In this document: positions 1 through 51,500 of the stretch, in pieces
Layout: every line of letters begins with the position of its first letter
How positions within the stretch are numbered: the first letter of the stretch is position 1
Source of the DNA: Macrostomum lignano
Lineage: Eukaryota
Reading direction: 5' to 3'
Length of the DNA stretch: 64,000 nt
Assembly: GCA_002269645.1 (NCBI GenBank)
Contig: NIVC01000672.1
Span: 310,001-374,000 of the forward strand
Notes under the pieces: generated by a model
Told to the model about the DNA's origin: nothing
Seen by the model: the letters and a program-made list of their open reading frames with translations, nothing else
Database searches by the model: none
Position numbers and translations under genes: made by a program

Positions 1-109
1 GTGTCAGTGAGTATCAGAAAAATAAATTGAAAAAAAGCTGGCCCATAGCGAAAACGATGATGCAAGATTTATTCTTTCCTTCATCGATGAAAGGGACTCT
101 GCTGCCGCC

Positions 110-3100
110 GTGAGAGAATGCTGCAGTGAAATCAAAGCGCAGCCAAATATTCATATTTCATTTGCGCGGCTCAGTGATCTGCTTAACAATTCAAAGCTGT
201 TCCTTGAATTTCTGCGAGCTGTGGATGCCAAATTCCCTGCCGATTCCGTCCGGACTGCGCTAGAAAGTCAGCGGGACAGCTGGGCGACTGCAGCAATGCT
301 CAAGTTCTATCGGGAATATCCAGAGAGTGACACTTTTACGGAGGACGAGCTCAGATATCTGCTGTCAAATCCTAAGCAAGTGCAGTTGAAAAGATTTATA
401 AAACAACTCAACGGCAAGTTCAGGGCTACTTCCGTCTTGGCTGCGCTAAACCAGTGTCCAAAATGGGCGACTGCTGCTAAAGGAAAACTCCGTCAAAAAT
501 ATCAGAATGCTGATCTTAAAATTGACGAACTTAAAGATCTGCTTTCAGCTTCAGATGAAAATATGTTAGCTAAATTTATAGCACAGATCGATAACAGAGG
601 TATTCCTGCAAAAAATGTTATTGCTGAACTTCGTGAACAGCGGAAGAAACTGATTGAGGACTTACTTGCTGCCACAACAAATTTTCCGCATCAGTTGTGG
701 ACTGAGCTTCAAGGAGTTCTGCATCTGGAGTTAGAGCAGTTCGATGCTGCAAAGGAGAAGTTCGAGCTGCTTGATTCGAAACTGCCGCACAGACGCGAGC
801 TGATTGCCGACTCCATCATGAGCAAGCTGGAGCATCCTGAGACTCAATCTGAAGCCAAACGCGATGGTCTACTCGAGTGTCTCAGGCTGAAGTGCAAAGA
901 TGCTGGCCAGCAAGTTTTGGAGTTTCTTCAGGGCCTGAGGAACGATCCTAAACTTCACCACAGGAATCAGTATGAGCTGGTTGCTCGGCTGCTGAACCTG
1001 CGGAAAAGCTCAACGTCCTTCTTCATCAAGAAAAGGTTGCTGTACAAAAAATTACAGAGTTCAGATGAGGAATTCGATCTAGCGATGCAGGACAGCTACG
1101 AAAAGGCAGTAAATGAAGCGGAAGTTAAATTCCGGGACGTTTGCCAGAAGGTAAAAGAGGAGTTCGATCTGAACCCGTATCCACGTCAAGCACTGCTCTC
1201 GGCCACTCGGAACCATCTCATAGCCGATCGCCAGCAAGAGAAGAAGTTCCTCAAGCAGACACTGGAGAACTCGCACAGGGCCCTGGACCACGCTTGGAAA
1301 AATTTCATTTATTCAGCTAAAAAATGTAGGCTTCCACGATATTTTCCTTTCGCTTACAAAAGAAGACAAGATGCTGATACTGGTGCTTTTATTAAGCCAA
1401 GAGACCAATTAAAACATTATAATCGAAATCCAAGCGAGCTCACAATTGAAAAAGTGACAGAATATTTTGAAAACAATTTTGAATCGACCGTCAATATGGA
1501 CCAGAAATTAATCGACTATTTTGTACGAAGAGAATTTAATATCCTAACAGAAGAGGGAGCGTGGATCATCCAATGGGTCAGTTCAGTGAATGAGGAGAAG
1601 CACAGGCTGCAAGTTAATATTGACGAACTTGAGCGAAGCGTGAACGAATTGCTTACTGCGACTGAAGCTCCGAAGAGTGTCTACGAACTGGCGCACAAAG
1701 CGACCGAGTTCGTTGAAGAGACCCGCCTAGTACTGCACCGGGAAAATGAGAATAGCGATGGAAGAAATCCCAACGGCTCACCAGGCGGAGGCGCTGGCCG
1801 CAGGCGCCGTGGAGGGAGTCACTCCATCCTACGAGGCGAAGACGCTGGCGAAAGTGACCTTGAAGGGAGTCATTTCGACCCACGAGGCGGAGGCGCTGAC
1901 GGCAGAGGCCGTGGAGGGAGTCACTTCGACCCACGAGGCGGAGGCGCTGGTGCCAGAGGGAGTCACTCCGTCCCACGAGGCGGAGGCGCTGGCGGCAGAG
2001 GCCGTGGAGGGAGTCACTTCGACCCACGAGGCGGAGGCGCTGGCGGCAGAGGCCGTGGAGGGAGTCAATTTGACCCACGAGGCGGAGGCGCTGGCGGCAG
2101 AGGCCGTGGAGGGAGTCACTTCGACCCACGAGGCGGAGGCGCTGGCGGCAGAGGCCGTGGAGGGAGTCACTCCGTCCTACAAAGCGTAGGCGCTGGCGGC
2201 AGAGGCCGTGGAGGGAGTCACTTCGACCCACGAGGCGGAGGCGCTGGTGCCAGAGGGAGTCACTCCGTCCCACGAGGCGGAGGCGCTGGCGGCAGAGGCC
2301 GTGGAGGGAGTCAATTTGACCCACGAGGCGGAGGCGCTGGCGGCAGAGGCCGTGGAGGGAGTCACTTTGACCCACGAGGCGGAGGCGCTGGCGGCAGAGG
2401 CCGTGGAGGGAGTCACTCCGTCCTACAAAGCGTAGGCGCTGGCGGCAGAGGCCGTGGAGGGAGTCACTTTGACCCACGAGGCGGAGGCGCTGGCGGCAGA
2501 GGCCGTGGAGGGAGTCAATTTGACCCACGAGGCGGAGGCGCTGGCGGCAGAGGCCGTGGAGGGAGTCAATTCGACCCACGAGGCGGAGGCGCTGGCGGCA
2601 GAGGCCGTGGAGGGAGTCACTCCATCCTACAAAGCGTAGGCGCTGGCGGCAGAGGCCGTGGAGGGAGTCACTCCATCCTACAAAGCGTAGGCGCTGGCGG
2701 CAGAGGCCGTGGAGGGAGTCACTCCGTCCCACGAGGCGGAGGCGCTGGCGCCAGAGGGAGTCACTCCGTCCCACGAGGCGGAGGCGCTGGCGGCAGAGGC
2801 CGTGGAGGGAGTCACTTCGACCCACGAGGCGGAGGCGCTGGCGGCAGAGGCCGTGGAGGGAGTCACTCCATCCTACAAAGCGTAGGCGCTGGCGGCAGAG
2901 GCCGTGGAGGGAGTCACTCCATCCTACAAAGCGTAGGCGCTGGCGGCAGAGGCCGTGGAGGGAGTCACTCCGTCCCACGAGGCAGAGGCGCTGGCGCCAG
3001 AGGGAGTCACTCCGTCCCACGAGGCGGAGGCGCTGGCGGCAGAGGCCGTGGAGGGAGTCACTTCGACCAACGAGGCGGAGGCGCTGGCGGCAGAGGCCGT

Positions 3101-3496
3101 GGAGGGAATCACTCCATCCTACGAGGCGGAGGCGCTGGCGACAGTGGCCGTGGAGGGAGTCACTCCGTCCCACGAGGCGGAGGCGCTGGCGACAGTGGCC
3201 GTGGAGGGAGTCACTCCGTCCCACGAGGCGGAGGCGCTGGCGACAGTGGCCGTGGAGGGAGTCACTCCGTCCCACGAGGCGGAGGCGCTGGCGACAGTGG
3301 CCGTGGAGGGAGTCACTCCGTCCCACGAGGCGGAGGCGCTGGCGACAGTGGCCGTGGAGGGAGTCACTCCGTCCCACGAGGCGGAGGCGCTGGCGACAGT
3401 GGCCGTGGAGGGAGTCACTCCGTCCCACGAGGCGGAGGCGCTGGCGACAGTGGCCGTGGAAGAGAATCCCAACGCCCACATTCCCGGAGGCCGTAA
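110..3496 (+). CDS. Uncharacterised protein, paralog A: 60-aa N-terminal repeats + shared HEPN-like C-terminal module + RGG-rich low-complexity tail
   Basis: 1128-aa ORF. Residues ~194-543 (nt 689-1737) align by eye with the C-terminal half of ORF 12943-15762 (e.g. LENSHRALDHAW/LENSHKAVDHAW, YFPFAYK/YFPFAYK, EGAWIIQWVSSVNEEKH/EGAWIILWVWSVNEEKH, SVYELAH, EETRL). The frame is open from nt 26 and the annotated start is GTG, so the true start may be upstream of the window or spliced. Confidence 0.75.
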   Translation: MRECCSEIKAQPNIHISFARLSDLLNNSKLFLEFLRAVDAKFPADSVRTALESQRDSWATAAMLKFYREYPESDTFTEDELRYLLSNPKQVQLKRFIKQLNGKFRATSVLAALNQCPKWATAAKGKLRQKYQNADLKIDELKDLLSASDENMLAKFIAQIDNRGIPAKNVIAELREQRKKLIEDLLAATTNFPHQLWTELQGVLHLELEQFDAAKEKFELLDSKLPHRRELIADSIMSKLEHPETQSEAKRDGLLECLRLKCKDAGQQVLEFLQGLRNDPKLHHRNQYELVARLLNLRKSSTSFFIKKRLLYKKLQSSDEEFDLAMQDSYEKAVNEAEVKFRDVCQKVKEEFDLNPYPRQALLSATRNHLIADRQQEKKFLKQTLENSHRALDHAWKNFIYSAKKCRLPRYFPFAYKRRQDADTGAFIKPRDQLKHYNRNPSELTIEKVTEYFENNFESTVNMDQKLIDYFVRREFNILTEEGAWIIQWVSSVNEEKHRLQVNIDELERSVNELLTATEAPKSVYELAHKATEFVEETRLVLHRENENSDGRNPNGSPGGGAGRRRRGGSHSILRGEDAGESDLEGSHFDPRGGGADGRGRGGSHFDPRGGGAGARGSHSVPRGGGAGGRGRGGSHFDPRGGGAGGRGRGGSQFDPRGGGAGGRGRGGSHFDPRGGGAGGRGRGGSHSVLQSVGAGGRGRGGSHFDPRGGGAGARGSHSVPRGGGAGGRGRGGSQFDPRGGGAGGRGRGGSHFDPRGGGAGGRGRGGSHSVLQSVGAGGRGRGGSHFDPRGGGAGGRGRGGSQFDPRGGGAGGRGRGGSQFDPRGGGAGGRGRGGSHSILQSVGAGGRGRGGSHSILQSVGAGGRGRGGSHSVPRGGGAGARGSHSVPRGGGAGGRGRGGSHFDPRGGGAGGRGRGGSHSILQSVGAGGRGRGGSHSILQSVGAGGRGRGGSHSVPRGRGAGARGSHSVPRGGGAGGRGRGGSHFDQRGGGAGGRGRGGNHSILRGGGAGDSGRGGSHSVPRGGGAGDSGRGGSHSVPRGGGAGDSGRGGSHSVPRGGGAGDSGRGGSHSVPRGGGAGDSGRGGSHSVPRGGGAGDSGRGGSHSVPRGGGAGDSGRGRESQRPHSRRP
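1785..3460 (+). repeat. Coding minisatellite, 51-nt and 42-nt units (GGRGRGGSHFDPRGGGA / GARGSHSVPRGGGA)
   Basis: Unit ggcggcagaggccgtggagggagtcacttcgacccacgaggcggaggcgct and variants; the unit lengths read are multiples of 3 and the ORF stays open across the array. Confidence 0.95.
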
Positions 3497-4297: not shown

Positions 4298-5719
4298 TGA
4301 GGTGTTTTCAAAAAGTAACGAAAATTCTGCTACAAAAACTTTCAGAACAAAAAAATGCAAATTCAGTCAACTGCAGCCTTCAAAGAAATTTGCTGCCACT
4401 TTCAACACATCGCCTTAATCGCTGGTGCCAGCTCCTGAAGCAGCCCTGGGAGACCTCCTTTATGACGCCTCCCAGCACCCCTGTCACAATCTCCTTGATG
4501 GCGCCCAAGGCTTCAAATCTGGATCCTTTGAGACCTGTCACAATCTCCTTGATGGCGCCCAAGGCTTCGAATCTGGATCCTTTGAGACCTGTCACAATCT
4601 CCTTGATGGCGTCCAAGGCTTCGAATCTGGATCCTTTGAGACCTGTCACAATCTCCTTGATGGCGCCCAAGGCTTCGAATCTGGATCCTTTGAGACCTGT
4701 CACAATCTCCTTGATGGCGTCCAAGGCTTCGAATCTGGATCCTTTGAGACCTGTCACAATCTCCTTGATGGCGTCCAAGGCTTCGAATCTGGATCCTTTG
4801 AGACCTGTCACAATCTCCTTGATGGCGTCCAAGGCTTCGAATCTGGATCCTTTGAGACCTGTCACAATCTCCTTGATGGCGTCCAAGGCTTCGAATCTGG
4901 ATCCTTTGAGACCTGTCACAATCTCCTTGATGGCGTCCAAGGCTTCAAATCTGGATCCTTTGAGACCTGTCACAATCTCCTTGATGGCGTCCAAGGCTTC
5001 GAATCTGGATCCTTTGAGACCTGTCACAATCTCCCTGATGGCGTCCAAGGCTTCGAATCTGGATCCTTTGAGACCTGTCACAATCTCCTTGATGGCGTCC
5101 AAGGCTTCGAATCTGGATCCTTTGAAACCTGTCACAATCTCCTTGATGGCGTCCAAGGCTTCGAATCTGGAACCTTTGAGGACCTGGTTCACCTTAAGAA
5201 AGAGTCGGAAATCACACGGCGTCATATCCGGTGAATAAGGTGGGTGGCTCAACTCTGCGACCGTCTTTTGGACCAAAACTGTCTCGATGTCTCGATGTCC
5301 AATCGCAGCTGTTTCTGATCGTCAGTGAGGAACTTCGGCACCGTCTTTGACGCTCTCCCGCCCATCCCGGAATCGCTGGTGCCACTCATGCACAATCGCC
5401 AGAGACGTAGCATCATCTCTATAAGTACTCGTATACACCTCACGAAGCAGCTGGAGGCATTCCGATGGCTTCTTGCTGAGTTTCACCAAAAACTTCGTGT
5501 TTATTAGATGCTGGTTGCTGATTTTGTGGCACAGCGGCGTGACAGCTATAATGAAAAATAATAAAAAATTCTCTCGTATGCAAACCAAAACACTTCGACA
5601 CAATAATGCTTCCTATAAAAACTGAGAAGCCGAGCTTCAAGAGACGTCGATTAATTTTAGTAAAAGCTCAAATTTTAAAATTTAACAGCAACTCTCGTTA
5701 CTTTTTGGCCACACATCGT
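4298..5719 (-). mobile_element. Internally deleted mariner (Tc1/mariner) element with a tandem-amplified transposase segment
   Basis: Minus-strand peptides match mariner transposase: N-terminal HTH (INTKFLVKLSKKPSECLQLLREVY...VHEWHQRFRDGRESV), PKFLTDDQKQLR, and C-terminal HPPYSPDMTPCDFRLF...LKGSRF...CFRSWHQRLRRC. Imperfect TIRs TGAGGTGTTTTCAAAAAGTAACG (from 4298, after TA) and CGTTACTTTTTGGCCACACATCGT (5696-5719). The central catalytic region is absent. Confidence 0.9.
4479..5180. repeat. 54-nt tandem repeat x13 inside the mariner remnant (LKGSRFEALDAIKEIVTG on the minus strand)
   Basis: Unit ttgagacctgtcacaatctccttgatggcgtccaaggcttcgaatctggatcct; 234 aa = 13 x 18 aa in ORF 4380-5276. Confidence 0.95.
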
Positions 5720-8955: not shown

Positions 8956-10161
8956 TTGGCTCATCATCTTGCATGGAAGCCTTACGGACTCGACTGTCTG
9001 AAGGTGCTGGTTGAGAGGCTCGGCCCCTCCTGTCTGACTCAAGCCAGAGACCAGTATGGCAACGCGCCACTGCATTGGGTTGCTTTTTGCCAAGACGAGA
9101 ACTTCATGGAGTTCATCCACAGTCGCATAGGAGCGGAATGCTTCGAGCTGAAAGGCAGGTACAGCAGGTCCATTGCGTTCTTCGCGGCTGAAAACAATCG
9201 CAGCAACTCCATTCTGAAGTGGATTGCCAGAAAGAAAGGACCCGGTTTTCTGACTGCAGTCGATTCGAATGGTAACTCACCTGTGCACAGGGCAGCGGGC
9301 TGTCAGGGCTCAGACTCCATGCAGTTCTTCAAGTCGCTTTTCGGACCCGACTGCTTCTTTCAGAAAGGAGATTTAGGCCGAACTGCTTTTCATTATGCCG
9401 CTATGAATGGAAGCAGCAACTCGGCCCTCAAGTGGCTGGTCAGCGAGTGCGGCTCAGACTGTCTGATGGAGAAAGATGATCAGGGCAGCACTCCTATCCA
9501 CCTGGCTGCACTTGAGCAAGGCGAAGACTCCATGCAGTTCATCAAGGAGCAGCTCGGGTCGCTCGTCTTCATGCTGAAAGGCCTCAACGGAGAGACTTCG
9601 GTCCACATAGCAGCGAGAAACACCTCCAGCAACTCCGCCTTTGCCTGGTGCATCAAGGAGCTGGGCGCCAGGTGTCTGCTGGTTAAAGATTCATATCAAA
9701 GATTGCCCATTCACCTGGCAGCTCGGCATCAGGACGAGAAGTCGATGCAGCTGGCGGTGAGCTCGCTCGGACCGGACTGCCTCAAGATGGCAGCTGAGCA
9801 GCAGAGAACTGCGGTTCACTTCGCAGCCATGAACTCCAGCAGCAGCTCCGCACTGCGGTGGATTGTCGGCCAGCTGGGACCCGACTGCCTGCAGCTGAGG
9901 GACTCCGAGGGCAGCATGGCGCTGCACCTGGCAGCTCAGCACCAGGGCGTGGACTCGCTGAGGCTCATCAAGGAGACGCTGGGCGTCGCCGCCTTCAGGC
10001 TGACGGGTCACCGCGGTCAGACGGTGGCTCACTATGCCGCTGCGAACAGCGAGAAGCAGCAGCTGATGGCGTGGCTCGTCACCGAGGTCGGGCCGCGGTG
10101 CCTTGTGGTGGTCGATGAGCAGGGAAGAATGGCCGCCGATCTGGCTGGCTACTATGAGTAG
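8956..10161 (+). CDS. Ankyrin-repeat protein (~11 repeats, alternating 35/36-aa units)
   Basis: Repeated DxxGxTPxHxAA / GxxGxTAxHxAA motifs throughout. The frame is open from 8653, and an in-frame ATG at 8590 is separated by TAG at 8650-8652, so the 5' end is uncertain (splicing likely). Confidence 0.85.
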   Translation: MAHHLAWKPYGLDCLKVLVERLGPSCLTQARDQYGNAPLHWVAFCQDENFMEFIHSRIGAECFELKGRYSRSIAFFAAENNRSNSILKWIARKKGPGFLTAVDSNGNSPVHRAAGCQGSDSMQFFKSLFGPDCFFQKGDLGRTAFHYAAMNGSSNSALKWLVSECGSDCLMEKDDQGSTPIHLAALEQGEDSMQFIKEQLGSLVFMLKGLNGETSVHIAARNTSSNSAFAWCIKELGARCLLVKDSYQRLPIHLAARHQDEKSMQLAVSSLGPDCLKMAAEQQRTAVHFAAMNSSSSSALRWIVGQLGPDCLQLRDSEGSMALHLAAQHQGVDSLRLIKETLGVAAFRLTGHRGQTVAHYAAANSEKQQLMAWLVTEVGPRCLVVVDEQGRMAADLAGYYE

Positions 10162-33700: not shown

Positions 33701-36700
33701 TCCTATCCTTCAGATCCCTACAAATCCCATCCTTCAGATCTCTACAAATCCCATCCTTCAGATCTCTGCAAATCCCATACTTCAGATCCCTACAAATCCC
33801 ATCCTTCAGATCCCTACAAATCCCATCCTTCAGATCTCTGCAAATCCCATCCTTCAGATCCCTACAAATCCCATCCTTCAGATCCCTACAAATCCCATCC
33901 TTCAGATCTCTGCAAATCCCATACTTCAGATCTCTGCAAATCTCATCCTTCAGATCCCTACAAATCCCATCCTTCAGATCCCTACAAATCCAATCCTTCA
34001 GATCCCTTTAAATCCCATCCTTCAGATCCCTACAAATCCCACACTTCAGCTCCCTACAAATCCCATACTTCAGATCCCTACAAATCCCACACTTCAGATC
34101 TCTGCAAATCCCATCCTTCAGATCCCTACAAATCCCATCCTTCAGATCCCTACAAATCCCATCCTTCAGATCCCTACAAATCCCATCCTTCAGATCTCAG
34201 CAAATCCCATCCTTCAGATCCCTACAAATCCCATCCTTCAGATCCCTACAAATCCCATCCTTCAGATCCCTACAAATCCCATCCTTCAGATCTCAGCAAA
34301 TCCCATCCTTCAGATCCCTACAAATCCCATCCTTCAGATCCCTACAAATCCCATCCTTCAGATCTCAGCAAATCCCATCCTTCAGATCCCTACAAATCCC
34401 ATCCTTCAGATCCCTACAAATCCCATCCTTCAGCTCCCTACAAATCCCATACTTCAGATCCCTACAAATCCCACACTTCAGATCTCTGCAAATCCCATCC
34501 TTCAGATCTCTACAAATCCCATACTTCAGATCCCTACAAATCCCATCCTTCAGATCTCTACAAATCCCATCCTTCAGATCTCTACAAATCCCATACTTCA
34601 GATCCCTACAAATCCCATTCTTCAGATCCCTATAAATCTCATCCTTCAGATCCCTACAAATCCCATCCTTCAGATCCCTACAAATCCCACACTTCAGATC
34701 CCTACAAATCTCATCCTTCAGATCCCTACAAATCCCATCCTTCAGATCTCTGCAAATCCCATCCTTCAGATCTCTGCAAATCCCACACTTCAGATCTCTG
34801 CAAATCCCATCCTTCAGATCCCTACAAATGCCATACTTTAGATCCCTTTAAATCCCATCCTTCAGATCCTACAAATCCCATCCTTCAGATCTCTGCAAAT
34901 CCCATCCTTCAGATCCCTACAAATCCCATCCTTCAGATCTCTGCAAATCCCATACTTCAGATCCCTAGAAATCCCATCTTTCAGATCCCTACAAATCCCA
35001 TCCTTCAGATCTCAGCAAATCCCATCCTTCAGATCCCTACAAATCCCATCCTTCAGATCCCTACAAATCCCACACTTCAGATCCCTACAAATCCCATCCT
35101 TCAGATCCCTACAAATCCCATCCTTCAGATCCCTACAAATCCCACACTTCAGATCCCTACAAATCTCATCCTTCAGATCCCTACAAATCCCATCCTTCAG
35201 ATCCCTACAAATCCCATCCTTCAGATCTCAGCAAATCCCATCCTTCAGATCCCTACAAATCCCATCCTTCAGATCCCTACAAATCCCATCCTTCAGCTCC
35301 CTACAAATCCCATACTTCAGATCCCTACAAATCCCACACTTCAGATCTCTGCAAATCCCATCCTTCAGATCCCTACAAATCCCATACTTCAGATCCCTAC
35401 AAATCCCATCCTTCAGATCTCTACAAATCCCATCCTTCAGATCTCTACAAATCCCATACTTCAGATCCCTACAAATCCCATTCTTCAGATCCCTATAAAT
35501 CTCATCCTTCAGATCCCTACAAATCCCATCCTTCAGATCCCTACAAATCCCATACTTCAGATCTCTACAAATCCCATACTTCAGATCCCTAGAAATCCCA
35601 TCCTTCAGATCCCTACAAATCCCATCCTTCAGATCTCAGCAAATCCCATCCTTCAGATCCCTACAAATCCCATCCTTCAGATCCCTACAAATCCCACACT
35701 TCAGATCCCTACAAATCCCATCCTTCAGATCCCTACAAATCCCATCCTTCAGATCCCTACAAATCCCATCCTTCAGATCCCTACAAATCCATCCTTCAGA
35801 TCCCTACAAATCCCATCCTTCAGATCCCTACAAATCCCATCCTTCAGATCTCACAAATCCCATCCTTCAGATCCCTACAAATCCCATCCTTCAGATCCCT
35901 ACAAATCCCATCCTTCAGATCCCTACAAATCCCATACATCAGATCCCTACAAATCCCATCCTTCAGATCTCTGCAAATCCCATCCTTCAGCTCCCTACAA
36001 ATCCCATACTTCAGATCCCTACAAATCCCATCCTTCAGATCCCTACAAATCCCATCCTTCAGATCCCTACAAATCCCATACTTCAGATCCCTACAAATCC
36101 CATACTTCAGATCCCTATAAATCCATCCTTCAGATCCCTACAAATCCCATCCTTCAGATCCCTACAAATCCCATACTTCAGATCCTACAAATCCCATACT
36201 TCAGATCCCTAGAAATCCCATCTTCAGATCCCTACAAATCCCATACTTCAGATCCCTACAAATCTCATACTTCAGATTCCTACAAATCCCATACTTCAGA
36301 TCCCTTCGAATCCCATACTTCAGATCCCTACAAATCCCATACTTCAGATCCTACAAATCCCATCTTCAGATCCCTTCGAATCCCATACTTCAGATCTCTG
36401 CAAATCCCATACTTCAGATCCCTACAAATCCCATCCTTCAGATCCCTACAAATCCCATACTTCAGATCCCTACAAATCCATACTTCAGATTCCTACAAAT
36501 CCCATACTTCAGATCCCTTCGAATCCCATCTTCAGATCCTACAAATCCCATACTTCAGATCCTACAAATCCCATCCTTCAGATCCCTTCAAATCCCATCC
36601 TTCAGATCTCTGCAAATCCCATACTTCAGATCCCTACAAATCCCATCCTTCAGATCTCTGCAAATCCCATCTTCAGATCCCTACAAATCCCATCCTTCAG

Positions 36701-39690
36701 ATCCCTACAAATCCCATCCTTCAGATCCCTACAAATCCCATCCTTCAGATCCCTACAAATCCCATCCTTCAGATCCCTACAAATCCCATCCTTCAGATCC
36801 CTACAAATCCCATCCTTCAGATCCCTACAAATCCCATCCTTCAGATCCCTACAAATCCCATCCTTCAGATCCCTACAAATCCCATCCTTCAGATCCCTAC
36901 AAATCCCATCTTCAGATCCCTACAAATCCCACCTTCAGATCTCTGCAAATCCCATCCTTCAGATCCCTACAAATCCCATACTTCAGATCCCTACAAATCC
37001 CATCCTTCAGATCTCTACAAATCCCATCCTTCAGATCTCTACAAATCCCATACTTCAGATCCCTACAAATCCCATTCTTCAGATCCCTATAAATCTCATC
37101 CTTCAGATCCCTACAAATCCCATCTTCAGATCCCTACAAATCCCACACTTCAGATCCCTACAAATCTCATCCTTCAGATCCCTACAAATCCCATCCTTCA
37201 GATCTCTGCAAATCCCATCCTTCAGATCTCTGCAAATCCCACACTTCAGATCTCTGCAAATCCCATCCTTCAGATCCCTACAAATGCCATACTTTAGATC
37301 CCTTTAAATCCCATCCTTCAGATCCCTACAAATCCTATCCTTCAGATCCCTACAAATCCCATCCTTCAGATCCCTACAAATCCCATCCTTCAGATCTCTG
37401 CAAATCCCATACTTCAGATCCCTACAAATCCCATCCTTCAGATCCCTACAAATCCCATCCTTCAGATCTCTGCAAATCCCATCCTTCAGATCCCTACAAA
37501 TCCCATCCTTCAGATCCCTACAAATCCCATCCTTCAGATCTCTGCAAATCCCATACTTCAGATCTCTGCAAATCTCATCCTTCAGATCCCTACAAATCCC
37601 ATCCTTCAGATCCCTACAAATCCCATACTTCAGATCTCTACAAATCCCATACTTCAGATCCCTAGAAATCCCATCCTTCAGATCCCTACAAATCCCATAC
37701 TTCAGATCCCTACAAATCTCATACTTCAGATTCCTACAAATCCCATACTTCAGATCCCTTCGAATCCCATACTTCAGATCCCTACAAATCCCATACTTCA
37801 GATTCCTACAAATCCCATACTTCAGATCCCTTCGAATCCCATACTTCAGATCTCTGCAAATCCCATACTTCAGATCCCTAGAAATCCCATCCTTCAGATC
37901 CCTACAAATCCCATACTTCAGATCCCTACAAATCTCATACTTCAGATTCCTACAAATCCCATACTTCAGATCCCTTCGAATCCCATACTTCAGATCCCTA
38001 CAAATCCATACTTCAGATTCCTACAAATCCCATACTTCAGATCCCTTCGAATCCCATCCTTCAGATCTCTGCAAATTCCATACTTCAGATCCCTACAAAT
38101 CCCATCCTTCAGATCTCTGCAAATCCCATACTTCAGATCCCTAGAAATCCCATCCTTCAGATCCCTACAAATCCCATCCTTCAGATCTCAGCAAATCCCA
38201 TCCTTCAGATCCCTACAAATCCCATCCTTCAGATCCCTACAAATCCCATCCTTCAGATCCCTACAAATCCCACACTTCAGATCCCTACAAATCTCATCCT
38301 TCAGATCCCTACAAATCCCATCCTTCAGATCCCTACAAATCCCATCCTTCAGATCTCAGCAAATCCCATCCTTCAGATCCCTACAAATCCCATCCTTCAG
38401 ATCCCTACAAATCCCATCCTTCAGCTCCCTACAAATCCCATACTTCAGATCCCTACAAATCCCACACTTCAGATCTCTGCAAATCCCATCCTTCAGATCC
38501 CTACAAATCCCATACTTCAGATCCCTACAAATCCCATCCTTCAGATCTCTACAAATCCCATCCTTCAGATCTCTACAAATCCCATACTTCAGATCCCTAC
38601 AAATCCCATTCTTCAGATCCCTATAAATCTCATCCTTCAGATCCCTACAAATCCCATCCTTCAGATCCCTACAAATCCCACACTTCAGATCCCTACAAAT
38701 CTCATCCTTCAGATCCCTACAAATCCCATCCTTCAGATCTCTGCAAATCCCATCCTTCAGATCTCTGCAAATCCCACACTTCAGATCTCTGCAAATCCCA
38801 TCCTTCAGATCCCTACAAATGCCATACTTTAGATCCCTTTAAATCCCATCCTTCAGATCCCTACAAATCCTATCCTTCAGATCCCTACAAATCCCATCCT
38901 TCAGATCCCTACAAATCCCATCCTTCAGATCTCTGCAAATCCCATACTTCAGATCCCTACAAATCCCATCCTTCAGATCCCTACAAATCCCATCCTTCAG
39001 ATCTCTGCAAATCCCATCCTTCAGATCCCTACAAATCCCATCCTTCAGATCCCTACAAATCCCATCCTTCAGATCTCTGCAAATCCCATACTTCAGATCT
39101 CTGCAAATCTCATCCTTCAGATCCCTACAAATCCCATCCTTCAGATCCCTACAAATCCCATACTTCAGATCTCTACAAATCCCATACTTCAGATCCCTAG
39201 AAATCCCATCCTTCAGATCCCTACAAATCCCATACTTCAGATCCCTACAAATCTCATACTTCAGATTCCTACAAATCCCATACTTCAGATCCCTTCGAAT
39301 CCCATACTTCAGATCCCTACAAATCCCATACTTCAGATTCCTACAAATCCCATACTTCAGATCCCTTCGAATCCCATACTTCAGATCTCTGCAAATCCCA
39401 TACTTCAGATCCCTAGAAATCCCATCCTTCAGATCCCTACAAATCCCATACTTCAGATCCCTACAAATCTCATACTTCAGATTCCTACAAATCCCATACT
39501 TCAGATCCCTTCGAATCCCATACTTCAGATCCCTACAAATCCCATACTTCAGATTCCTACAAATCCCATACTTCAGATCCCTTCGAATCCCATCCTTCAG
39601 ATCTCTGCAAATTCCATACTTCAGATCCCTACAAATCCCATACTTCAGATCCCTGCAAATCCCATCTATCAGATTTCTTCAGATCCCTTC
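30791..39690 (+). repeat. ~8.9-kb satellite of a 24-nt unit (ttcagatccctacaaatcccatcc)n, roughly 370 copies, with higher-order structure
   Basis: Direct reading; rare variant aatgccatacttt recurs at ~31637, 32501, 33653, 34829, 37285 and 38820. Confidence 0.98.
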
Positions 39691-39952: not shown

Positions 39953-42900
39953 TCAGCCGCTGCCGCCAGCGCGGCTGCTGCTGCTCTTCGAGCTTGAAGC
40001 CAGACTGACCACCTGCGGGTTGAAGGGGAGGTGTGGGATCTTATAGATGGGATATGGTGTGGGGATTTTACAGATGAGATATAGAGGTGTGGGATCTTAT
40101 ATAGCTGGGATATAGAGGTTTGGGATCTTATAGATGAGATATAGAGGTGTGGGATCTTATATAGATGGGATATAGAGGTGTGGGATCTTATATAGATAGG
40201 ATATAGAGGTGTGGGATCTTATAGATGAGATATAGAGGTATGGGATCTTATATAGATGGGATATGGGGTGTGGGATGCTATGGATAGGACATTGAGGTGT
40301 GGGATCTTATAGATGAGATATAGAGGTGTAGGATTTTATATAGCTGGGATATGGAGGCGTGGGATCTTATATAGATGGGAGATGGAGGTGTGGGATCTTA
40401 TATAGATGGGACATGGAAGTGTGGGATCTTAAAGATGGGTTATGGAGGTGTGAGATCCTACAGATGGGAGATGGAGTTGTGGGATCTTATAGATGGGACA
40501 TGGAGGTGTGGGATCTTATAGATGGGATATGGTGTGGGATCTTAAAGATTGAATACGTAGGTGTGGGACCTTATAGATGGGATACGGAGGTGTGGGATCT
40601 TATATAAATGGTATATAGAGGTGTAGGATCGTATAGATGGGATACGGAGGTGTGGGATCGTATAGATGGGATACGGAGGTGTGGGATCTTATAGATGGGA
40701 TACGGAGGTGTGGGATCTTATATAGATGGTATAAGGAGGTGTGGGATGCTATGAATAGGATATTGAGGTGTGGAATCTGATCTGAAGCTAATGGGATAAA
40801 GAGGATCTGAGATAAAGAGTAAAACTGGCACAAAAGTCAGCACCAAATCGCATTAAGCCAAGAAAGCGGATTTGGGCACCGCGGCCTGCCCTGCCAGTCC
40901 CCAGGCCACGCAAGCACTGGGTTTCACCTTTGGCCCACACAGCCTTGGGAACGGCGGGGTCGGGAAGGGAAGAGTGGGACGAAGGACCCCCTGCCCCGGG
41001 CAGGCAGGGCAATCGATGCGGGCGGCCCAATTAACTGCAGGGCCCGGCCAACCGTGAGCTGCCGGCCGGTGAACTCGGGCGGAAGCCAGGACGGGGGGGG
41101 CAAAGCCGGGGTTCGAAATTAGCTTCGTTATTTTACGGGGGCCCATGGAGTGCGGGGTTACTACGGCTGCTCAGCCGTTACCGGATTTCATGGCCGCTGA
41201 CTGTACGAAACTCCTTCTGGCTGCTCAGGAGAAAGCGCACTGCTTGACCTTCGGGTTGCTGTGTTTATATAGGGGATTTATAAAGACATCAGATCATGTA
41301 TATGAGCACAGCATAACCATGAGCACAGCATGATCATGAGCACAGCATGACCATGAGCACAGCATGACCATGAGCACAGCATGATCATGAGCACAGCATG
41401 ACCATGAGCATGACCATGAGCACAGCATGACCATGAGCACAGCATGATCATGAGCACAGCATGACCATGAGCACAGCATGACCATGAGCACAGCATGACC
41501 ATGAGCACAGCATGACCATGAGCACACAATGACCATGAGCACAGCATGACTATGAGCACAGCATGACCATGAGCACAGCATGACCATGAGCACAGCATGA
41601 CCATGAGAACACAACAACCATGAGAACACAACAACCATGAGCACAGCATGACCATGAGCACACAATGACCATGAGCACAGCATGACTATGAGCACAGCAT
41701 GACCATGAGCACAGCATGACCATGAGCACAGCATGACCATGAGCACAGCATAACCATAAGCACAGTATGACCATGAGCACAGCATAACCATGAGCACACA
41801 ATGACAATGAGCACAGCATGACCATGAGCACACAATGACCATGAGCACAGCATGACCATGAGCACACAATGACAATGAGCACAGCATGACCATGAGCACA
41901 CAATGACCATGAGCACAGCGTGACCATGAGCACAGCATTACCATGAGCACACAACAACCATGAGCACACAATGACCATGAGCACAGTATGACCAAGAGCA
42001 AACCCTCCCAAGGAAGCCAGCGCCAAGGACTCCGCAGTCCTTACCATCCTGGCCGCCTCGTCCAGGCACTCGCAGACGCTGACGGCGGCGCCGCTCTCCC
42101 TGCGCAGCAGCTGCCTGGCCTCGCTGCCGCGGTTGCCCTGCAGCCGGACCACCACGGGCAGGCCAGGCCGAAGGCGCTGCAGCGCGGAGACGAGGCCCTC
42201 CGCCACGACGTCGCAGCGGACGATGCCGCCGAAGATGTTCACCAGCGCGGCGGTGACGCGGCCGTCCGAGCCGATGATGTCCAGCGCCTGCGCCACCTGC
42301 TTGGCCGTGACGGTGCCGCCGACGTCAAGGAAGTTGGCGGGCTCGCCGCCGTGCAGCTTGACGATGTCCATGGTGGCCATGGCCAGGCCCGCGCCGTTCA
42401 CCAGGCAGCCGATGTCGCCATCCATGCCGACGTACTTCAGGCCGCAGCCGGCCGCCGTAGCGTCGCGCGGGTCCTCCTGGGCCCAGTCGCGGGCGCTGCA
42501 GAGCTCCGGCTGGCGGAAGCGCGCGTTCGAGTCCACGTTGAGCTTGCAGTCCAGGCACAGCACTGCGGGTTTGGAGTGGGGAAATTATCTAGGGGAGATT
42601 TATTGCATAGGGAGATTTTTCCTATAGGAGATTTATCCCTTGGGAGATTTATCCTATGGGGAGATTATTCTATGTTGAGATTTATCCTACATGTATGGGG
42701 AGATTTATCCTATGGGAGATTTATCGTATGGGGAGATTTATCCTAAGGGGAAATTTATCCTATGAGGAGATTTATCTCATGGGGAGATTTATTGCATAGG
42801 GGAGATTTATCATATAAGGAGATTTATCCTATGGGGAGATTGATTCTTTAGGGAGATTTATTCTATAGGAGATTTGTCCCATAAATAGATACATTCCATA

Positions 42901-48585: not shown

Positions 48586-51500
48586 TCAGCGGTTTTTCAT
48601 ATCCACTTGGACTCGCTTGGTCACGCGGCCGGCGCAGATGCCGACAACCAGCAGACCGAGGACCAGCAGCAGCCCCACCAGCAGGAAGTACATCCGGGAT
48701 GGCGAGGCCGACATCTGCCCCATCACGTCGCGCAGACTCTCCGGAGGGGCGGCCTTGAAGGCGGCCTCCATGATGTCCACGCGCTCCTTGAGGCGGTCGC
48801 GGCAGCGCTTGGAGATCATCTGGTTGGCCTGGCTGTCCTTGAACAGGCTGACTGCGCAGGACATCTGCCGGCCGTTGCCCAGCGGCACGCCGCGGCACAG
48901 GTTGCGGATCTCGAAGGAGCAGGCCTGGTACAACACCGGGTCCACGTGGATGTCGGCGCCCATGTCCTTGAACAGCAGCAGCACCTCGTGACGGCAGGCC
49001 GCGTGCTCCTTGGGGATTTTGTCCTGGGCGGCGGCCCGCTTCAAGCACTCGGTGACGCCCAGCAGGCTGCCGCCGGCGCCCGTCTCCGGCTCGGCGTCCG
49101 CGGCCTCCTCCTGGCAGAGCTGCTGCACCACCGGCTTGCAGGCGCGGGCCAGGCGCGGCTCCAACCGGTAGTTCATGTTGTACTCGAACAGGATGTCACG
49201 CAGGTAGCGGTGGCAGCGCTGCCGCAGCGGCTGCTTGCCCTCGGTGCTGACGCGGCGCAGGCACTGCATCACCGTGTCCTGCAGCTGGTCCTGCGTGGAC
49301 TTGAACCGGTTGTCCCCAGCCGACTTCAGCTCCTTGGAGCAGTACCTGGCGATGCAGAGTGACACATGGGAATGCAGAGTGGCACATGGGAATGCAGAGT
49401 GGCACATGGGAATGCAGAGTGGCACATGGGAATGCAGAGTGGCACATGGGAATGCAGAGTGGCACATGGGAATGCAGAGTGACACATGGGAATGCAGAGT
49501 GGCACATGGGAATGCAGAGTGGCACATGGGAATGCAGAGTGGCACATGGGAATGCAGAGTGACACATGGGAGTGCAGAGTGACACATGGGATGGGAATGC
49601 AGAGTGACACATGGGAGTGCAGAGTGACACATGACAATGGATAGTGACACAGCATCACTGACAGACACATCAAACACTAGAAAGTGACACACTATCAATG
49701 CGGAGTGACACACTATCAATGCGGAGTGACACACTATCAATGCGGAGTGACACGCTATAAATGCGGAGTGAAACACTATCAATGCGGAGTGACACGCTAT
49801 AAATGCGGAGTGACACACTATCAATGCGGAGTGACACACTATCACTGCGGAGTGACACACTATCAATGCGGAGTGACACACTATCAATGCGGAGTGACAC
49901 ACTATCAATGCGGAGTGACACACTATCAATGCGGAGTGACACACTATCAATGCAGAGTGACACAATATCACTGCGGAGTGACACACTATCACTGCGGAGT
50001 GACACACTATCAGTGCGGAGTGCTCACTTGGTGATGTCGCGCCGGCAGGCCCTCTTAAGCTCCGGGTTGAGCTCATAGTCGGTCTGCTGCACGCGCAGCC
50101 GCTTGTAGATGACCCTGCGGCAGCGCTTGTCAAAGTCATCGTCGTGCATTCGCTCGCGCAGGCAGGTGAACAGCTCGGTGGGGTTGCCGGCCTTCTCGGA
50201 GCAGTGCTGGCTGATCATGGCCCGGCAGCGCTTCATCAGCCTGGCATCGTAGGTCGGCATGTCCATCTGCATCTTCTGCCGGCGGAACACCACCCGGTGG
50301 CAGCGGGGGCTGAGGCTGCGGACATTGTCCTTCAGGCAGGCCAGCGGGTCGGCGGCGTCGCTGCAGACGCTCTCCAGGTCGGCTTTGCAGGCCCGCTGGA
50401 GCCGGGGGTCCAGGTCCACGGACTGGCCGCGCTGCAGCATCTCGAAGGTGAGCTTGGCGCGGCACTTGGCCGGCACCCGCTGGGTCTGCTCAGTCAGGGT
50501 GTCGTTGCGCACCATCTCGGACAGGCAGCGGACGGCGTCCTTTTTGGTGGCCACGCCCGGACACTGGCCGGTGATGGTGGGGCCGCAGGCTTGCGAGAAG
50601 GCGTACGAGAAGCTCACGTCGTCCAGGGCGATGAGCTGGTGGTGCGCCACCCCGGCCCGGCACTTCTCCGGCATGTCGGGGTGCTTCAGCAGCCGGATGA
50701 GGCACTCCATGGTGGAGTCTGGGCGGGGTAAGAGGGGTAAGGAAAGGTAAGAGTTGTGATTGGGGTGCCACTTGTGTGATTGTTTACGGGTCGAGCTGTT
50801 GGTGGGTGATCACCGAGCTGTGGGTGGGTGATCACCGAGCTGTTGGTGGGTGATCACCGAGCTGTGGGTGGGTGATCACCGAGCTGTTGGTGGGTGATCA
50901 CCGAGCTGTGGGTGGGTGATCACCGAGCTGTTGGTGGGTGATCACCGAGCTGTGGGTGGGTGATCACCGAGCTGTGGGTGGGTGATCACTGAGCTGTTTG
51001 TGGGTGATCACCGAGCTGTGGGTGGGTGATCACCGAGCTGTTGGTTGGTGGGTGATCACCGAGCTGTGGGTGGGTGATCACCGAGCTGTTGGTTGGTGGG
51101 TGATCACCGAGCTGTGGGTGGGTGATCACCGAGCAGTGAGTGGGTGATCACCGAGCTGTGGGTGGGTGATCACTGAGCTGTTTGTGGGTGATCACCGAGC
51201 TGTGGGTGGGTGATCACCGAGCTGTTGGTTGGTGGGTGATCACCGAGCTGTGGGTGGGTGATCACCGAGATGTGAGTGTGTGATCACCAAGCTGTGGGTG
51301 GGTGATCACCGAGCTGTGGGTGGGTGATCACCGAGCTGTGGGAGGGTGATAACGTAGCAGTGGGTGGGTGATAACGTAGCAGTGGGTGGGTGATAACGTA
51401 GCAGTAGGAAACGCAAGCTCTGACGACGCCCTCACCCTCACCAGCTGATTCGGAGTCCTTGTTGCAGTGGGCCTGGGCAAAAGGCAGGCAGCTGCGCACC

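What the first reader, a model, noticed from the sequence alone, without database searches (positions are those of the whole stretch)
689..1737. Conserved ~350-aa module shared by both paralogs, with a candidate catalytic NEEKHR motif
Seen: despite many substitutions and indels, blocks YEL.ARLLNL...SFFIKKR, YPR.ALL.ATR.HL, TLENSH.A.DHAW (1265-1297), YFPFAYK (1340), EGAWII.WV.SVNEEKH (NEEKHR 1589-1606) and SVYELAH...EETRL are near-invariant between A and B. Conserved polar H/N/K/E residues suggest an active site rather than a scaffold. No named domain could be confidently assigned, so this may be an undescribed domain.
Basis: partly seen in the sequence, partly recalled or inferred. Interest (0 to 1): 0.7.

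Follow-up and report, generated by a model that had tools for sequence, protein, structure and literature searches.

The report
New end-domain of flatworm IFIT-like proteins
The two copies are real tandem paralogs from the flatworm Macrostomum lignano. The shared block is the C-terminal third of a small, uncharacterised family of helical-repeat proteins whose N-terminus resembles vertebrate antiviral IFIT proteins, and it ends in a four-helix unit with an almost invariant Glu/Asn/Lys/His cluster that matches no described domain.

Summary

The window is Macrostomum lignano (gene A = PAA78669.1).

An exhaustive HMM search of 1.84 billion proteins found only 24 relatives. They are M. lignano paralogs plus tandem arrays in one unnamed eukaryote from an ENA assembly.

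N, K and H of "NEEKH" are 97-100% conserved in 32 sequences, together with E282, W292, W296, H336, E340 and E343. The two E's and the R of "NEEKHR" are not conserved.

No Pfam, NCBIfam, PADLOC or PDB sequence match covers the module. The AlphaFold model is confident (pLDDT 90), all-alpha, and has no Foldseek neighbour.

HEPN is not supported: there is no Rx4-6H motif and no profile or fold hit.

The "module" is not a separate unit. A and B are homologous along their whole length, and A's N-terminus lies just left of the window.

The family's N-terminal 170 aa match IFIT5 and IFIT1 specifically (hhalign 96.5%).

The tails after the module are RGG repeats or CCCH zinc fingers.

Best reading: an undescribed C-terminal domain of IFIT-related, probably RNA-directed proteins. 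Catalysis is plausible but untested.

The parts
26..3496 (+). In-window part of gene A (NCBI PAA78669.1, BOX15_Mlig019237g1). The reading frame is open from 26, and the mechanical ORF runs 110-3496. The gene continues to the left of the window.
   Evidence: Window position 1 equals L003 position 9706 on NIVC01000672.1. The upstream ORF L003 8037-9818 is 42% identical to B residues 4-456.
15..41 (+). A-rich stretch containing an A7 run. Here the upstream ORF of gene A and the in-window ORF change frame by one nucleotide. This is either an assembly indel or a real frameshift.
   Evidence: Similarity to B continues across the frame change (read directly from the translations).
170..688 (+). A-specific insertion of three ~55-aa repeats between the TPR body and the module. 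It is absent from B.
   Evidence: Repeat 1 vs repeat 2 E=2e-8; repeat 2 vs repeat 3 E=7e-4. No Pfam match.
689..1737 (+). The module in gene A (349 aa). It is all-alpha with 18 predicted helices.
   Evidence: AlphaFold2 with a 32-sequence alignment gives pLDDT 90.1 and pTM 0.89.
1490..1735 (+). Terminal four-helix unit of A (module residues ~268-349; helices 272-288, 292-304, 311-321, 331-348). This is the most conserved part of the family and a separate last exon in some relatives.
   Evidence: Exon structure was seen in L001, L002 and L005.
1589..1603 (+). The N-x-x-K-H motif (N301, K304, H305) at the C-terminal end of helix 292-304.
   Evidence: N 31/32, K 32/32, H 31/32. The residues lie on the polar side of the helix.
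1694..1717 (+). H336-x3-E340-x2-E343 stripe on the last helix (family consensus AH.AAEFAE).
   Evidence: H 30/32, E 31/32, E 32/32. The residues sit 134-166 degrees from the hydrophobic face.
1532..1576 (+). E282 (94%), I285, W292 and W296 (both 100%). This is the R-E-H..I...AW...W segment of the unit.
   Evidence: E282 lies on the hydrophobic face, so it is probably buried.
1736..3496 (+). Gly/Arg-rich tail of A, in frame with the module: 586 aa, 40% Gly, 53 RGG, pI 12. It is encoded by a 51-bp tandem repeat at 1779-3460.
   Evidence: A similar (GRGGSEHFR)n tail follows the module in the distant paralog P0005.
12943..15762 (+). Gene B, a complete 939-aa paralog. It has a divergent IFIT-like N-terminus (MESHFQRLPD...), a TPR body, the module, and a short Ala/Lys/Glu tail that runs into an (AGGCTG)n microsatellite.
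14479..15627 (+). The module in gene B. NxxKH is at 15481-15495; H882, E886 and E889 are at 15586-15609.

Best explanation
The block is the C-terminal third of a lineage-restricted family of ~870-1100-aa all-alpha TPR proteins.

Shown:
- The family's N-terminal ~170 aa, including the ECHF(T/K)W start, are homologous to the N-terminal subdomain of vertebrate IFIT1 and IFIT5.
- The middle of the protein is a generic TPR array.
- The module continues the helical solenoid and ends in an ~82-aa four-helix unit with a nearly invariant polar set: E282, N301, K304, H305, H336, E340 and E343. Two invariant Trp residues frame it.
- This unit matches no described domain or solved fold.
- After the module come variable tails of RNA-binding type: RGG repeats in A and P0005, and CCCH zinc fingers in P0002, P0007 and P0034.
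- The genes sit in tandem arrays and have expanded independently in two organisms.

Inferred:
- The proteins act on RNA, as IFITs do.
- The TPR clamp and the basic tail hold the RNA.
- The exposed His/His/Lys/Asn/Glu cluster of the terminal unit is the working site. Most likely it performs phosphodiester or 5'-phosphate chemistry, either as an RNase A/T1-like general acid-base set or as a His/Glu metal site.
For: - A vs B: E=1e-91.
- Family: 24 hits among 1.84e9 representatives. Members are named only 'hypothetical', 'TPR_REGION' or 'C3H1-type' from M. lignano, or are unnamed ENA sequences.
- Conservation of the polar set: 94-100% of 32 sequences that otherwise share 20-35% identity.
- The polar residues lie on polar helix faces.
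- The model is confident: pLDDT 90.1, pTM 0.89.
- No known domain or fold.
- IFIT link: the N-terminal profile hits only IFIT5 (E=1.1e-5) and IFIT1 among 177,635 PDB sequences. hhalign gives 96.5% against IFIT5 residues 15-175, versus 5.8% for a consensus-TPR control.
- RGG tail. CCCH tails.
- The terminal unit is its own exon in L001, L002 and L005.
- Tandem arrays. Lineage-specific clades.
- P0016 has lost E282, H305 and H336 together.
Against: - There is no experimental or expression evidence.
- I could not read model coordinates, so spatial clustering of the invariant residues is inferred from helix periodicity only.
- TPR and solenoid proteins are usually scaffolds, not enzymes.
- The terminal unit is acidic (median net charge -4), which is not what a direct RNA-backbone binder looks like.
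- The window's own paralogs A and B show no IFIT signal by themselves. The link is transitive through other family members.
- The IFIT5 RNA-contact residues T37 and Q41 are not conserved in the aligned region (read).
- H283 is only 72% conserved and is Phe in A.
Confidence: 0.4

Rival explanations
1. The domain is a non-catalytic binding surface. The invariant polar stripe is a docking site for one conserved partner (a protein, a nucleotide or an RNA 5' end). The module is simply the end of a TPR scaffold, and the protein works by sequestration, as IFIT1 and IFIT5 do, without chemistry.
For: Every weak Foldseek or sequence neighbour of the module is a TPR or solenoid scaffold. The N-terminus is homologous to IFITs, which are binders and not enzymes. 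IFIT5 uses a Glu-bound metal to hold the triphosphate (general knowledge of IFIT5 structures).
Against: Two His, one Lys, one Asn and three Glu held at 94-100% across paralogs of 20-35% identity is more typical of a catalytic or metal site than of a docking surface. An acidic patch would not bind RNA backbone directly.
Confidence: 0.3
2. The site is structural. The His/Glu residues bind a structural metal or form a buried polar network that locks the last four helices onto the solenoid, with no ligand or substrate.
For: E282 falls on the hydrophobic face of its helix. The last helix is conserved on nearly all sides with many Ala residues, which suggests a tightly packed central helix. The invariant W292, W296 and F341 are clearly structural.
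Against: N301, K304, H305, H336, E340 and E343 share their helix faces with highly variable positions (294, 298, 337, 347). That argues for solvent exposure.
Confidence: 0.15
3. The terminal unit is a divergent HEPN-superfamily RNase.
For: It is an all-alpha unit of roughly HEPN size with four helices and conserved His and acidic residues. HEPN families that lack the Arg of the motif do exist (PMC3710099).
Against: No Rx4-6H motif exists anywhere in the unit; the residues 5-7 positions before H305 and H336 are never a conserved Arg. No HEPN-clan Pfam family was hit, even at E<=10, in 23 members. No HEPN structure appears among the Foldseek matches shown.
Confidence: 0.05

Closest known systems
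[quoted passage not shown]
   Same: The N-terminal ~170 aa of the family align to IFIT5 residues 15-175 from the ECHFTW motif onward (E=1.1e-5; hhalign 96.5%). Both are all-TPR. Like vertebrate IFITs, the genes are multi-copy, tandemly arrayed and expanded lineage by lineage.
   Different: The proteins are about twice as long. The C-terminal module and its invariant E/N/K/H/H/E/E unit have no IFIT counterpart detectable by sequence or fold. IFIT5 RNA-contact residues are not conserved in the aligned part. RGG or CCCH tails are added. The host is a flatworm with no interferon system, whereas PMC3688568 reports IFITs only in jawed vertebrates. Paralogs A and B have lost the CHFTW signature.
HEPN-superfamily RNases (KEN domain of RNase L/Ire1, Cas13, RnlA/LsoA, Swt1)
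   Same: Both are small all-alpha units with conserved His and acidic residues, attached to repeat or sensor modules in conflict-type proteins. The proposed function is also RNA cleavage.
   Different: There is no Rx4-6H motif, no profile similarity and no fold match. The unit is not a member by the tests that could be run.
Generic TPR scaffolds (LGN, LapB, OGT TPR, designed CTPR)
   Same: The first ~50 aa of the module and the preceding body score as TPR. The best Foldseek rows are TPR proteins.
   Different: Foldseek E>=0.04 and TM<=0.24. The terminal unit has no TPR consensus, and it carries a polar invariant set that scaffolding TPRs lack.
RGG/RG-motif and CCCH zinc-finger RNA-binding proteins (e.g. 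FUS-type RGG tails; ZAP-type CCCH fingers)
   Same: Gene A carries 53 RGG motifs in a 586-aa tail and P0005 has a similar tail. P0002, P0007 and P0034 carry C-x7-8-C-x4-5-C-x3-H fingers, and UniProt calls them C3H1-type.
   Different: These are only the appended tails. They say what the module is combined with, not what it is.

Membership tests
HEPN superfamily | Rx4-6H motif, with a polar residue after the Arg, at the start of the last core helix (PMC3710099) | tested here: not met
   The family consensus around the two conserved His residues is ...N-x-x-K-H... and T-A-Y-D-V-A-H. No conserved Arg lies 5-7 residues upstream of either (definition).
HEPN superfamily | Profile similarity to a HEPN-clan family | tested here: not met
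   hmmscan against Pfam-A of 25 full-length members (E<=0.01) and of 23 core units (E<=10) returned no HEPN family. PADLOC returned none.
HEPN superfamily | Four-helix up-down bundle of ~100-120 aa that superposes on HEPN structures | tested here: inconclusive
   The unit has four predicted helices in ~82 aa. Foldseek of the whole 349-aa model shows no HEPN chain in the 50 rows listed. The unit could not be searched on its own.
IFIT family | N-terminal subdomain with the CHFTW motif, homologous to IFIT1/IFIT5 | tested here: met
   Met for the family profile. IFIT5 and IFIT1 are the only PDB hits (E=1.1e-5 to 8e-4). hhalign gives 96.5% versus 5.8% for a consensus-TPR control. It is not detectable from A and B alone; B reads MESHFQRL.
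IFIT family | ~470-490-aa protein built of TPRs only, forming an RNA 5'-end pocket | tested here: not met
   Members are 870-1117 aa and carry an extra ~350-aa C-terminal module that does not match IFITs.
IFIT family | Conserved 5'-ppp/cap RNA contact residues (IFIT5 E33, T37, Q41, K150, R186, Y250, R253, H287/Q288; from knowledge of the IFIT5 structures) | tested here: inconclusive
   Only the first three residues fall in the aligned region. The E33 position is E/D in four of six sequences, while T37 and Q41 are not conserved (read from the alignment). The rest cannot be aligned.
IFIT family | Induction by interferon or virus | not testable with these tools
   No expression data were available, and no paper in the library mentions these genes.
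TPR repeat proteins | Tandem 34-aa helix-turn-helix repeats recognised by TPR profiles | tested here: met
   Met for the body and the start of the module. B residues 497-544 match TPR_12/TPR_19 weakly. The body profile hits LapB and CTPR at 6e-6 to 1e-3. The terminal unit itself has no TPR match.

The most novel reading that the evidence does not exclude
Flatworms, and at least one other unnamed eukaryote, possess an expanded family of true IFIT relatives that predate or lie outside the vertebrate interferon system. These have acquired a previously unseen alpha-helical His/Lys/Glu enzyme domain, a new RNase or RNA 5'-end-processing fold. That would turn an IFIT-type RNA clamp from a sequestering protein into a self-contained RNA-destroying restriction factor.
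Probability: 0.22. Interest if true: 0.85.

Novelty: new variant of a known kind. Interest (0 to 1): 0.6.

Why it matters
IFITs are textbook interferon effectors. The only paper in the library that addresses their origin places them in jawed vertebrates only (PMC3688568). A flatworm family that shares the IFIT N-terminal subdomain, carries a new and sharply conserved C-terminal unit, and ends in RNA-binding tails would matter in three ways. It would push the origin of the IFIT architecture back, or reveal horizontal or convergent history. It would add an uncharacterised domain with a clear, testable putative active site. It would also give Macrostomum lignano, a tractable regenerating model with RNAi and transgenesis, a candidate RNA-directed innate-immunity gene family. 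If the site turns out to be only a docking surface, the finding is a modest new domain family of unknown role.

Tried and rejected
- Word-indexed homolog searches found little. The two-sequence profile found nothing, and the larger profiles found only short ENA exons plus the window's own protein. The exhaustive HMM search was what revealed the family.
- The first AlphaFold run, with two sequences, was unusable (pLDDT 45).
- The module and the core gave no significant hit in Pfam, NCBIfam, PADLOC, PDB sequence searches, Foldseek against PDB or Foldseek against BFVD. SAMD9 (9zjs_B) appeared at Foldseek rank 5, but with E=0.1 and TM 0.15 it is a generic TPR match and I rejected it.
- The whole-length family profile did not recover IFIT. 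Only the N-terminal 260 columns did.
- Pattern scans of GTDB genomes, JGI metagenomes and IMG/VR for the AH.AAEFAE motif gave no relatives.
- Pfam did not recognise the CCCH fingers of P0034. Their assignment rests on the Cys/His spacing and UniProt's name.
- Hemerythrin-like, DinB-like and HD-type metal sites were considered from the H...HxxxE pattern. No profile supports any of them, and H283 is not conserved.
- Literature searches for the gene identifiers and for invertebrate IFIT-like proteins found nothing.
- The organism behind ENA assembly ERZ25074608 could not be identified.
Full report
**1. Observation.**
The ORF at 110-3496 (gene A) and the ORF at 12943-15762 (gene B) both lie on the + strand. 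Their products align over 384 columns with 47% identity, 61% positives and E=1e-91; MAFFT gives 51%. NEEKHR is at 1589-1606 and YFPFAYK starts at 1340. A tblastn of all family members against the window finds only these two copies.

**2. Where the window comes from.**
The window is eukaryotic. It holds intron-like gaps filled with minisatellites, a Mos1-type mariner remnant, Cys_rich_FGFR (GLG1-like) exons, a CoA-ligase exon and an ankyrin-repeat gene. Gene A is NCBI PAA78669.1, hypothetical protein BOX15_Mlig019237g1 of the flatworm Macrostomum lignano. The first 6 kb of the window are 100% identical to GCA_002269645.1 contig NIVC01000672.1, with window position 1 equal to L003 position 9706.

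**3. The 'module' is not a separate unit.**
- Fetching the 10 kb left of the window shows an ORF (L003 8037-9818, 593 aa) that is 42% identical to residues 4-456 of B (E=3e-98).
- This ORF meets the in-window ORF of A at an A-rich stretch (window 15-41, with an A7 run), where the frame changes by one nucleotide. Similarity to B continues across the change. It is either a homopolymer error of the long-read assembly or a recent frameshift, and I cannot tell which.
- Between this body and the module, A carries three ~55-aa repeats (window 170-688; R1/R2 E=2e-8) that B lacks.
- Position 689 is therefore only the point where A/B similarity resumes. The two genes are homologous end to end.

**4. The family.**
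- The word-indexed search found nothing with the two-sequence profile.
- The exhaustive HMM search of 1.84 billion cluster representatives found 24 proteins at E<=1e-3. One of them is A itself.
- The named ones are all M. lignano paralogs, labelled 'hypothetical', 'TPR_REGION domain-containing' or 'C3H1-type domain-containing'. The others come from long contigs (37% GC, ~100x coverage) of a single ENA assembly, ERZ25074608, whose organism I could not identify.
- No relatives were found by motif scan in GTDB genomes, JGI metagenomes or IMG/VR.
- In the ENA organism the genes stand in tandem arrays, with at least three in 12 kb of L004. In M. lignano, A and B are 9.4 kb apart on the same strand with an ankyrin gene between them.
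- A neighbour-joining tree of the core (no bootstrap) separates the M. lignano and ENA sequences. This points to independent expansions.

**5. Conservation.**
In a 32-sequence alignment whose members share 19-36% identity with A (B excepted, at 51%), these positions stand out (numbering within the module, 1 = window 689):

| Conservation | Residues |
|---|---|
| 100% | W292, W296, K304, E343 |
| 97% | N301, H305, A335, E340 |
| 94% | E282, I285, H336 |
| 91% | F341 |

- Of 'NEEKHR', only N, K and H are conserved.
- Upstream anchors such as Y95, F111, R166, D200 and P220 are conserved in the 18-24 sequences that cover them.
- The family consensus of the last ~82 aa is F.ARREH.II..E.AW...W....N..KH...(~25)...AYDVAH.AAEFAEQT.
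- In several ENA paralogs exactly this piece is a separate terminal exon, 1.2-1.6 kb downstream of the main exon (L001, L002, L005). That fits a discrete unit.
- One short ENA ORF (P0016) has lost E282, H305 and H336 together.

**6. Structure.**
- With two sequences AlphaFold failed (pLDDT 45).
- With the 32-sequence alignment it gave pLDDT 90.1 and pTM 0.89: 18 helices and no strands of note.
- The last four helices are 272-288, 292-304, 311-321 and 331-348. K304 and H305 cap the second of these. H336, E340 and E343 follow an i, i+4, i+7 spacing on the fourth.
- I could not read coordinates, so I used the alignment for a helical-wheel analysis. N301, K304, H305, D333, H336, E340, E343 and Q344 lie 114-166 degrees from the hydrophobic moment, next to the most variable positions. 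This suggests exposure. E282 lies on the hydrophobic face.
- Foldseek found nothing at E<=0.001 in PDB or BFVD. The best rows are TPR scaffolds with TM<=0.24.

**7. Known domains.**
- Pfam finds no family on the module in any of 25 members. It finds only weak TPR matches at the module's start and in the body.
- Scanning 23 core units at E<=10 gives scattered single hits and no HEPN family.
- NCBIfam and PADLOC give nothing.
- Profile searches of PDB sequences give nothing for the core and only E>0.05 TPR rows for the module.

**8. The HEPN lead.**
PMC3710099 defines the HEPN superfamily by a ~100-120-aa helical bundle with an Rx4-6H motif, often with an Ex3[KR] motif as well. The unit has no conserved Arg 5-7 residues before either conserved His, and no profile or fold similarity. 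I do not file it under HEPN. It may still work like one, as an RNA-cleaving helical effector.

**9. The IFIT link.**
- Several full-length members begin ...LECHFTW/ECHFKW....
- A profile of the first ~260 columns of six members, B included, hits only IFIT5 (3zgq, E=1.1e-5) and IFIT1 (E=2e-4 to 8e-4) among 177,635 PDB sequences. The alignment runs from the N-terminus to IFIT5 residue ~175.
- hhalign of the same profile against IFIT5 residues 15-175 gives 96.5% probability and E=7.7e-10. A consensus-TPR control gives 5.8%.
- The middle of the protein matches generic TPR proteins instead (LapB, 6e-6).
- A and B by themselves show no IFIT signal, and B reads MESHFQRL. The link is therefore transitive, through paralogs to which B's N-terminus is related at E~1e-10.
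- Within the aligned stretch, the IFIT5 E33 position is acidic in four of six sequences, but T37 and Q41 are not conserved.
- The only paper in the library that examines IFIT origins reports them in jawed vertebrates only (PMC3688568). I found no paper on invertebrate IFIT-like proteins or on these genes.

**10. Tails.**
- After the module, A continues in frame into 586 aa encoded by a 51-bp tandem repeat (1779-3460). The tail is 40% Gly with 53 RGG and 82 RG motifs, and pI 12.
- Repeats can stay open by chance. Here the minus-strand frame is also open through the array. However, P0005, a paralog only ~23% identical in the module, carries a similar (GRGGSEHFR)n tail in the same place. That argues the tail is translated and selected.
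- P0002, P0007 and P0034 instead carry repeated C-x7-8-C-x4-5-C-x3-H fingers, and UniProt names them C3H1-type. Pfam did not score them.
- Both tail types are classic RNA-binding appendages (established knowledge of RGG/RG motifs and CCCH fingers).

**11. Interpretation.**
- Shown: a lineage-restricted, tandemly expanding, all-alpha family. It has an IFIT-homologous N-terminal subdomain, a TPR body, and a C-terminal module ending in an undescribed four-helix unit with an exposed, almost invariant E/N/K/H/H/E/E set, followed by RNA-type tails.
- Inferred: the proteins act on RNA and the polar cluster is the working site.
- I favour chemistry on RNA, either cleavage or 5'-end processing (0.4). 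Two His plus Lys and Glu is the usual make-up of metal-independent RNases, and His/Glu of metal sites. The cluster also stays fixed while the rest of each paralog diverges.
- The main rivals are a non-catalytic docking or ligand site on an IFIT-like sequestering clamp (0.3) and a purely structural polar or metal site (0.15). HEPN membership is unlikely (0.05).
- The acidity of the unit (median net charge -4) and the absence of any experimental data are the main cautions.

**12. Verdict.**
The HEPN idea does not hold up, and the 'module' is part of a larger homologous protein. The unexpected result is the IFIT relationship in a flatworm. I rate this a new variant of a known kind, with interest 0.6.

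Noticed in passing
window 15-41 (L003 9720-9746): Gene A's N-terminal ORF, which lies mostly left of the window, and its in-window ORF differ by one frame within an A-rich stretch containing an A7 run. Similarity to paralog B continues across the change. This is either a long-read homopolymer error or a recent frameshift.
   Followed up: partly
L003 8037-8420 (just left of the window): Gene A's upstream ORF starts with ~130 aa that B lacks. They give a weak Pfam CBM_20 (starch-binding) match, E=0.0085 and below the cut-off.
   Followed up: partly
window 170-688: Three ~55-aa repeats (L..LL....F......A..V..AL...WATAA...) are inserted in A between the TPR body and the module. They have no Pfam match and are absent from B.
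   Followed up: partly
window 1779-3460: The annotated NCBI protein PAA78669.1 (1001 aa) is shorter than the genomic ORF, and the tool reports that the locus does not translate to it. The gene model apparently skips part of the 51-bp repeat array.
   Followed up: no
window 4380-5603 (-): A Mos1/mariner transposase remnant (HTH_48 match; '...HPPYSPDMTPCDFRLF') whose reading frame is interrupted by a 54-bp minisatellite of 13 copies at 4480-5186.
   Followed up: no
window 8956-10161 (+) (NCBI model from ~8689): An ankyrin-repeat gene (Ank_2 E=4e-29) lies between the two paralogs on the same strand. No ankyrin neighbour was seen at the family loci of the ENA organism.
   Followed up: partly
window 20208-21208 and 22950-23950: A near-identical ~2.7-kb direct duplication. 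The two 326-aa ORFs differ at one residue, and both carry the same 28-bp minisatellite.
   Followed up: no
window 30789-39674: An 8.9-kb array of a 24-bp unit (371 copies) with extreme GC skew (about -0.75). Minisatellites fill most non-coding DNA of the window (42 TRF rows with score >=200).
   Followed up: no
window 41550-42563 (-) and 48586-53126 (-): An exon of a succinyl-CoA-ligase-type gene (Ligase_CoA, E=2e-25) and several exons of a GLG1-like Golgi protein (Cys_rich_FGFR repeats). Their introns are occupied by tandem repeats.
   Followed up: no
window 15665-16301: Gene B's reading frame runs from the module into an (AGGCTG)n microsatellite, giving an AKAK.../AEAE... tail before the stop at 15762. 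It is unclear whether this is the true C-terminus or whether a splice site is used.
   Followed up: no
L004 9303-21641; L001, L002, L005: In the unnamed eukaryote of ENA assembly ERZ25074608 the family forms head-to-tail arrays, and some copies have an intron exactly before the terminal four-helix unit. LINE and gypsy retroelements lie next to them.
   Followed up: partly
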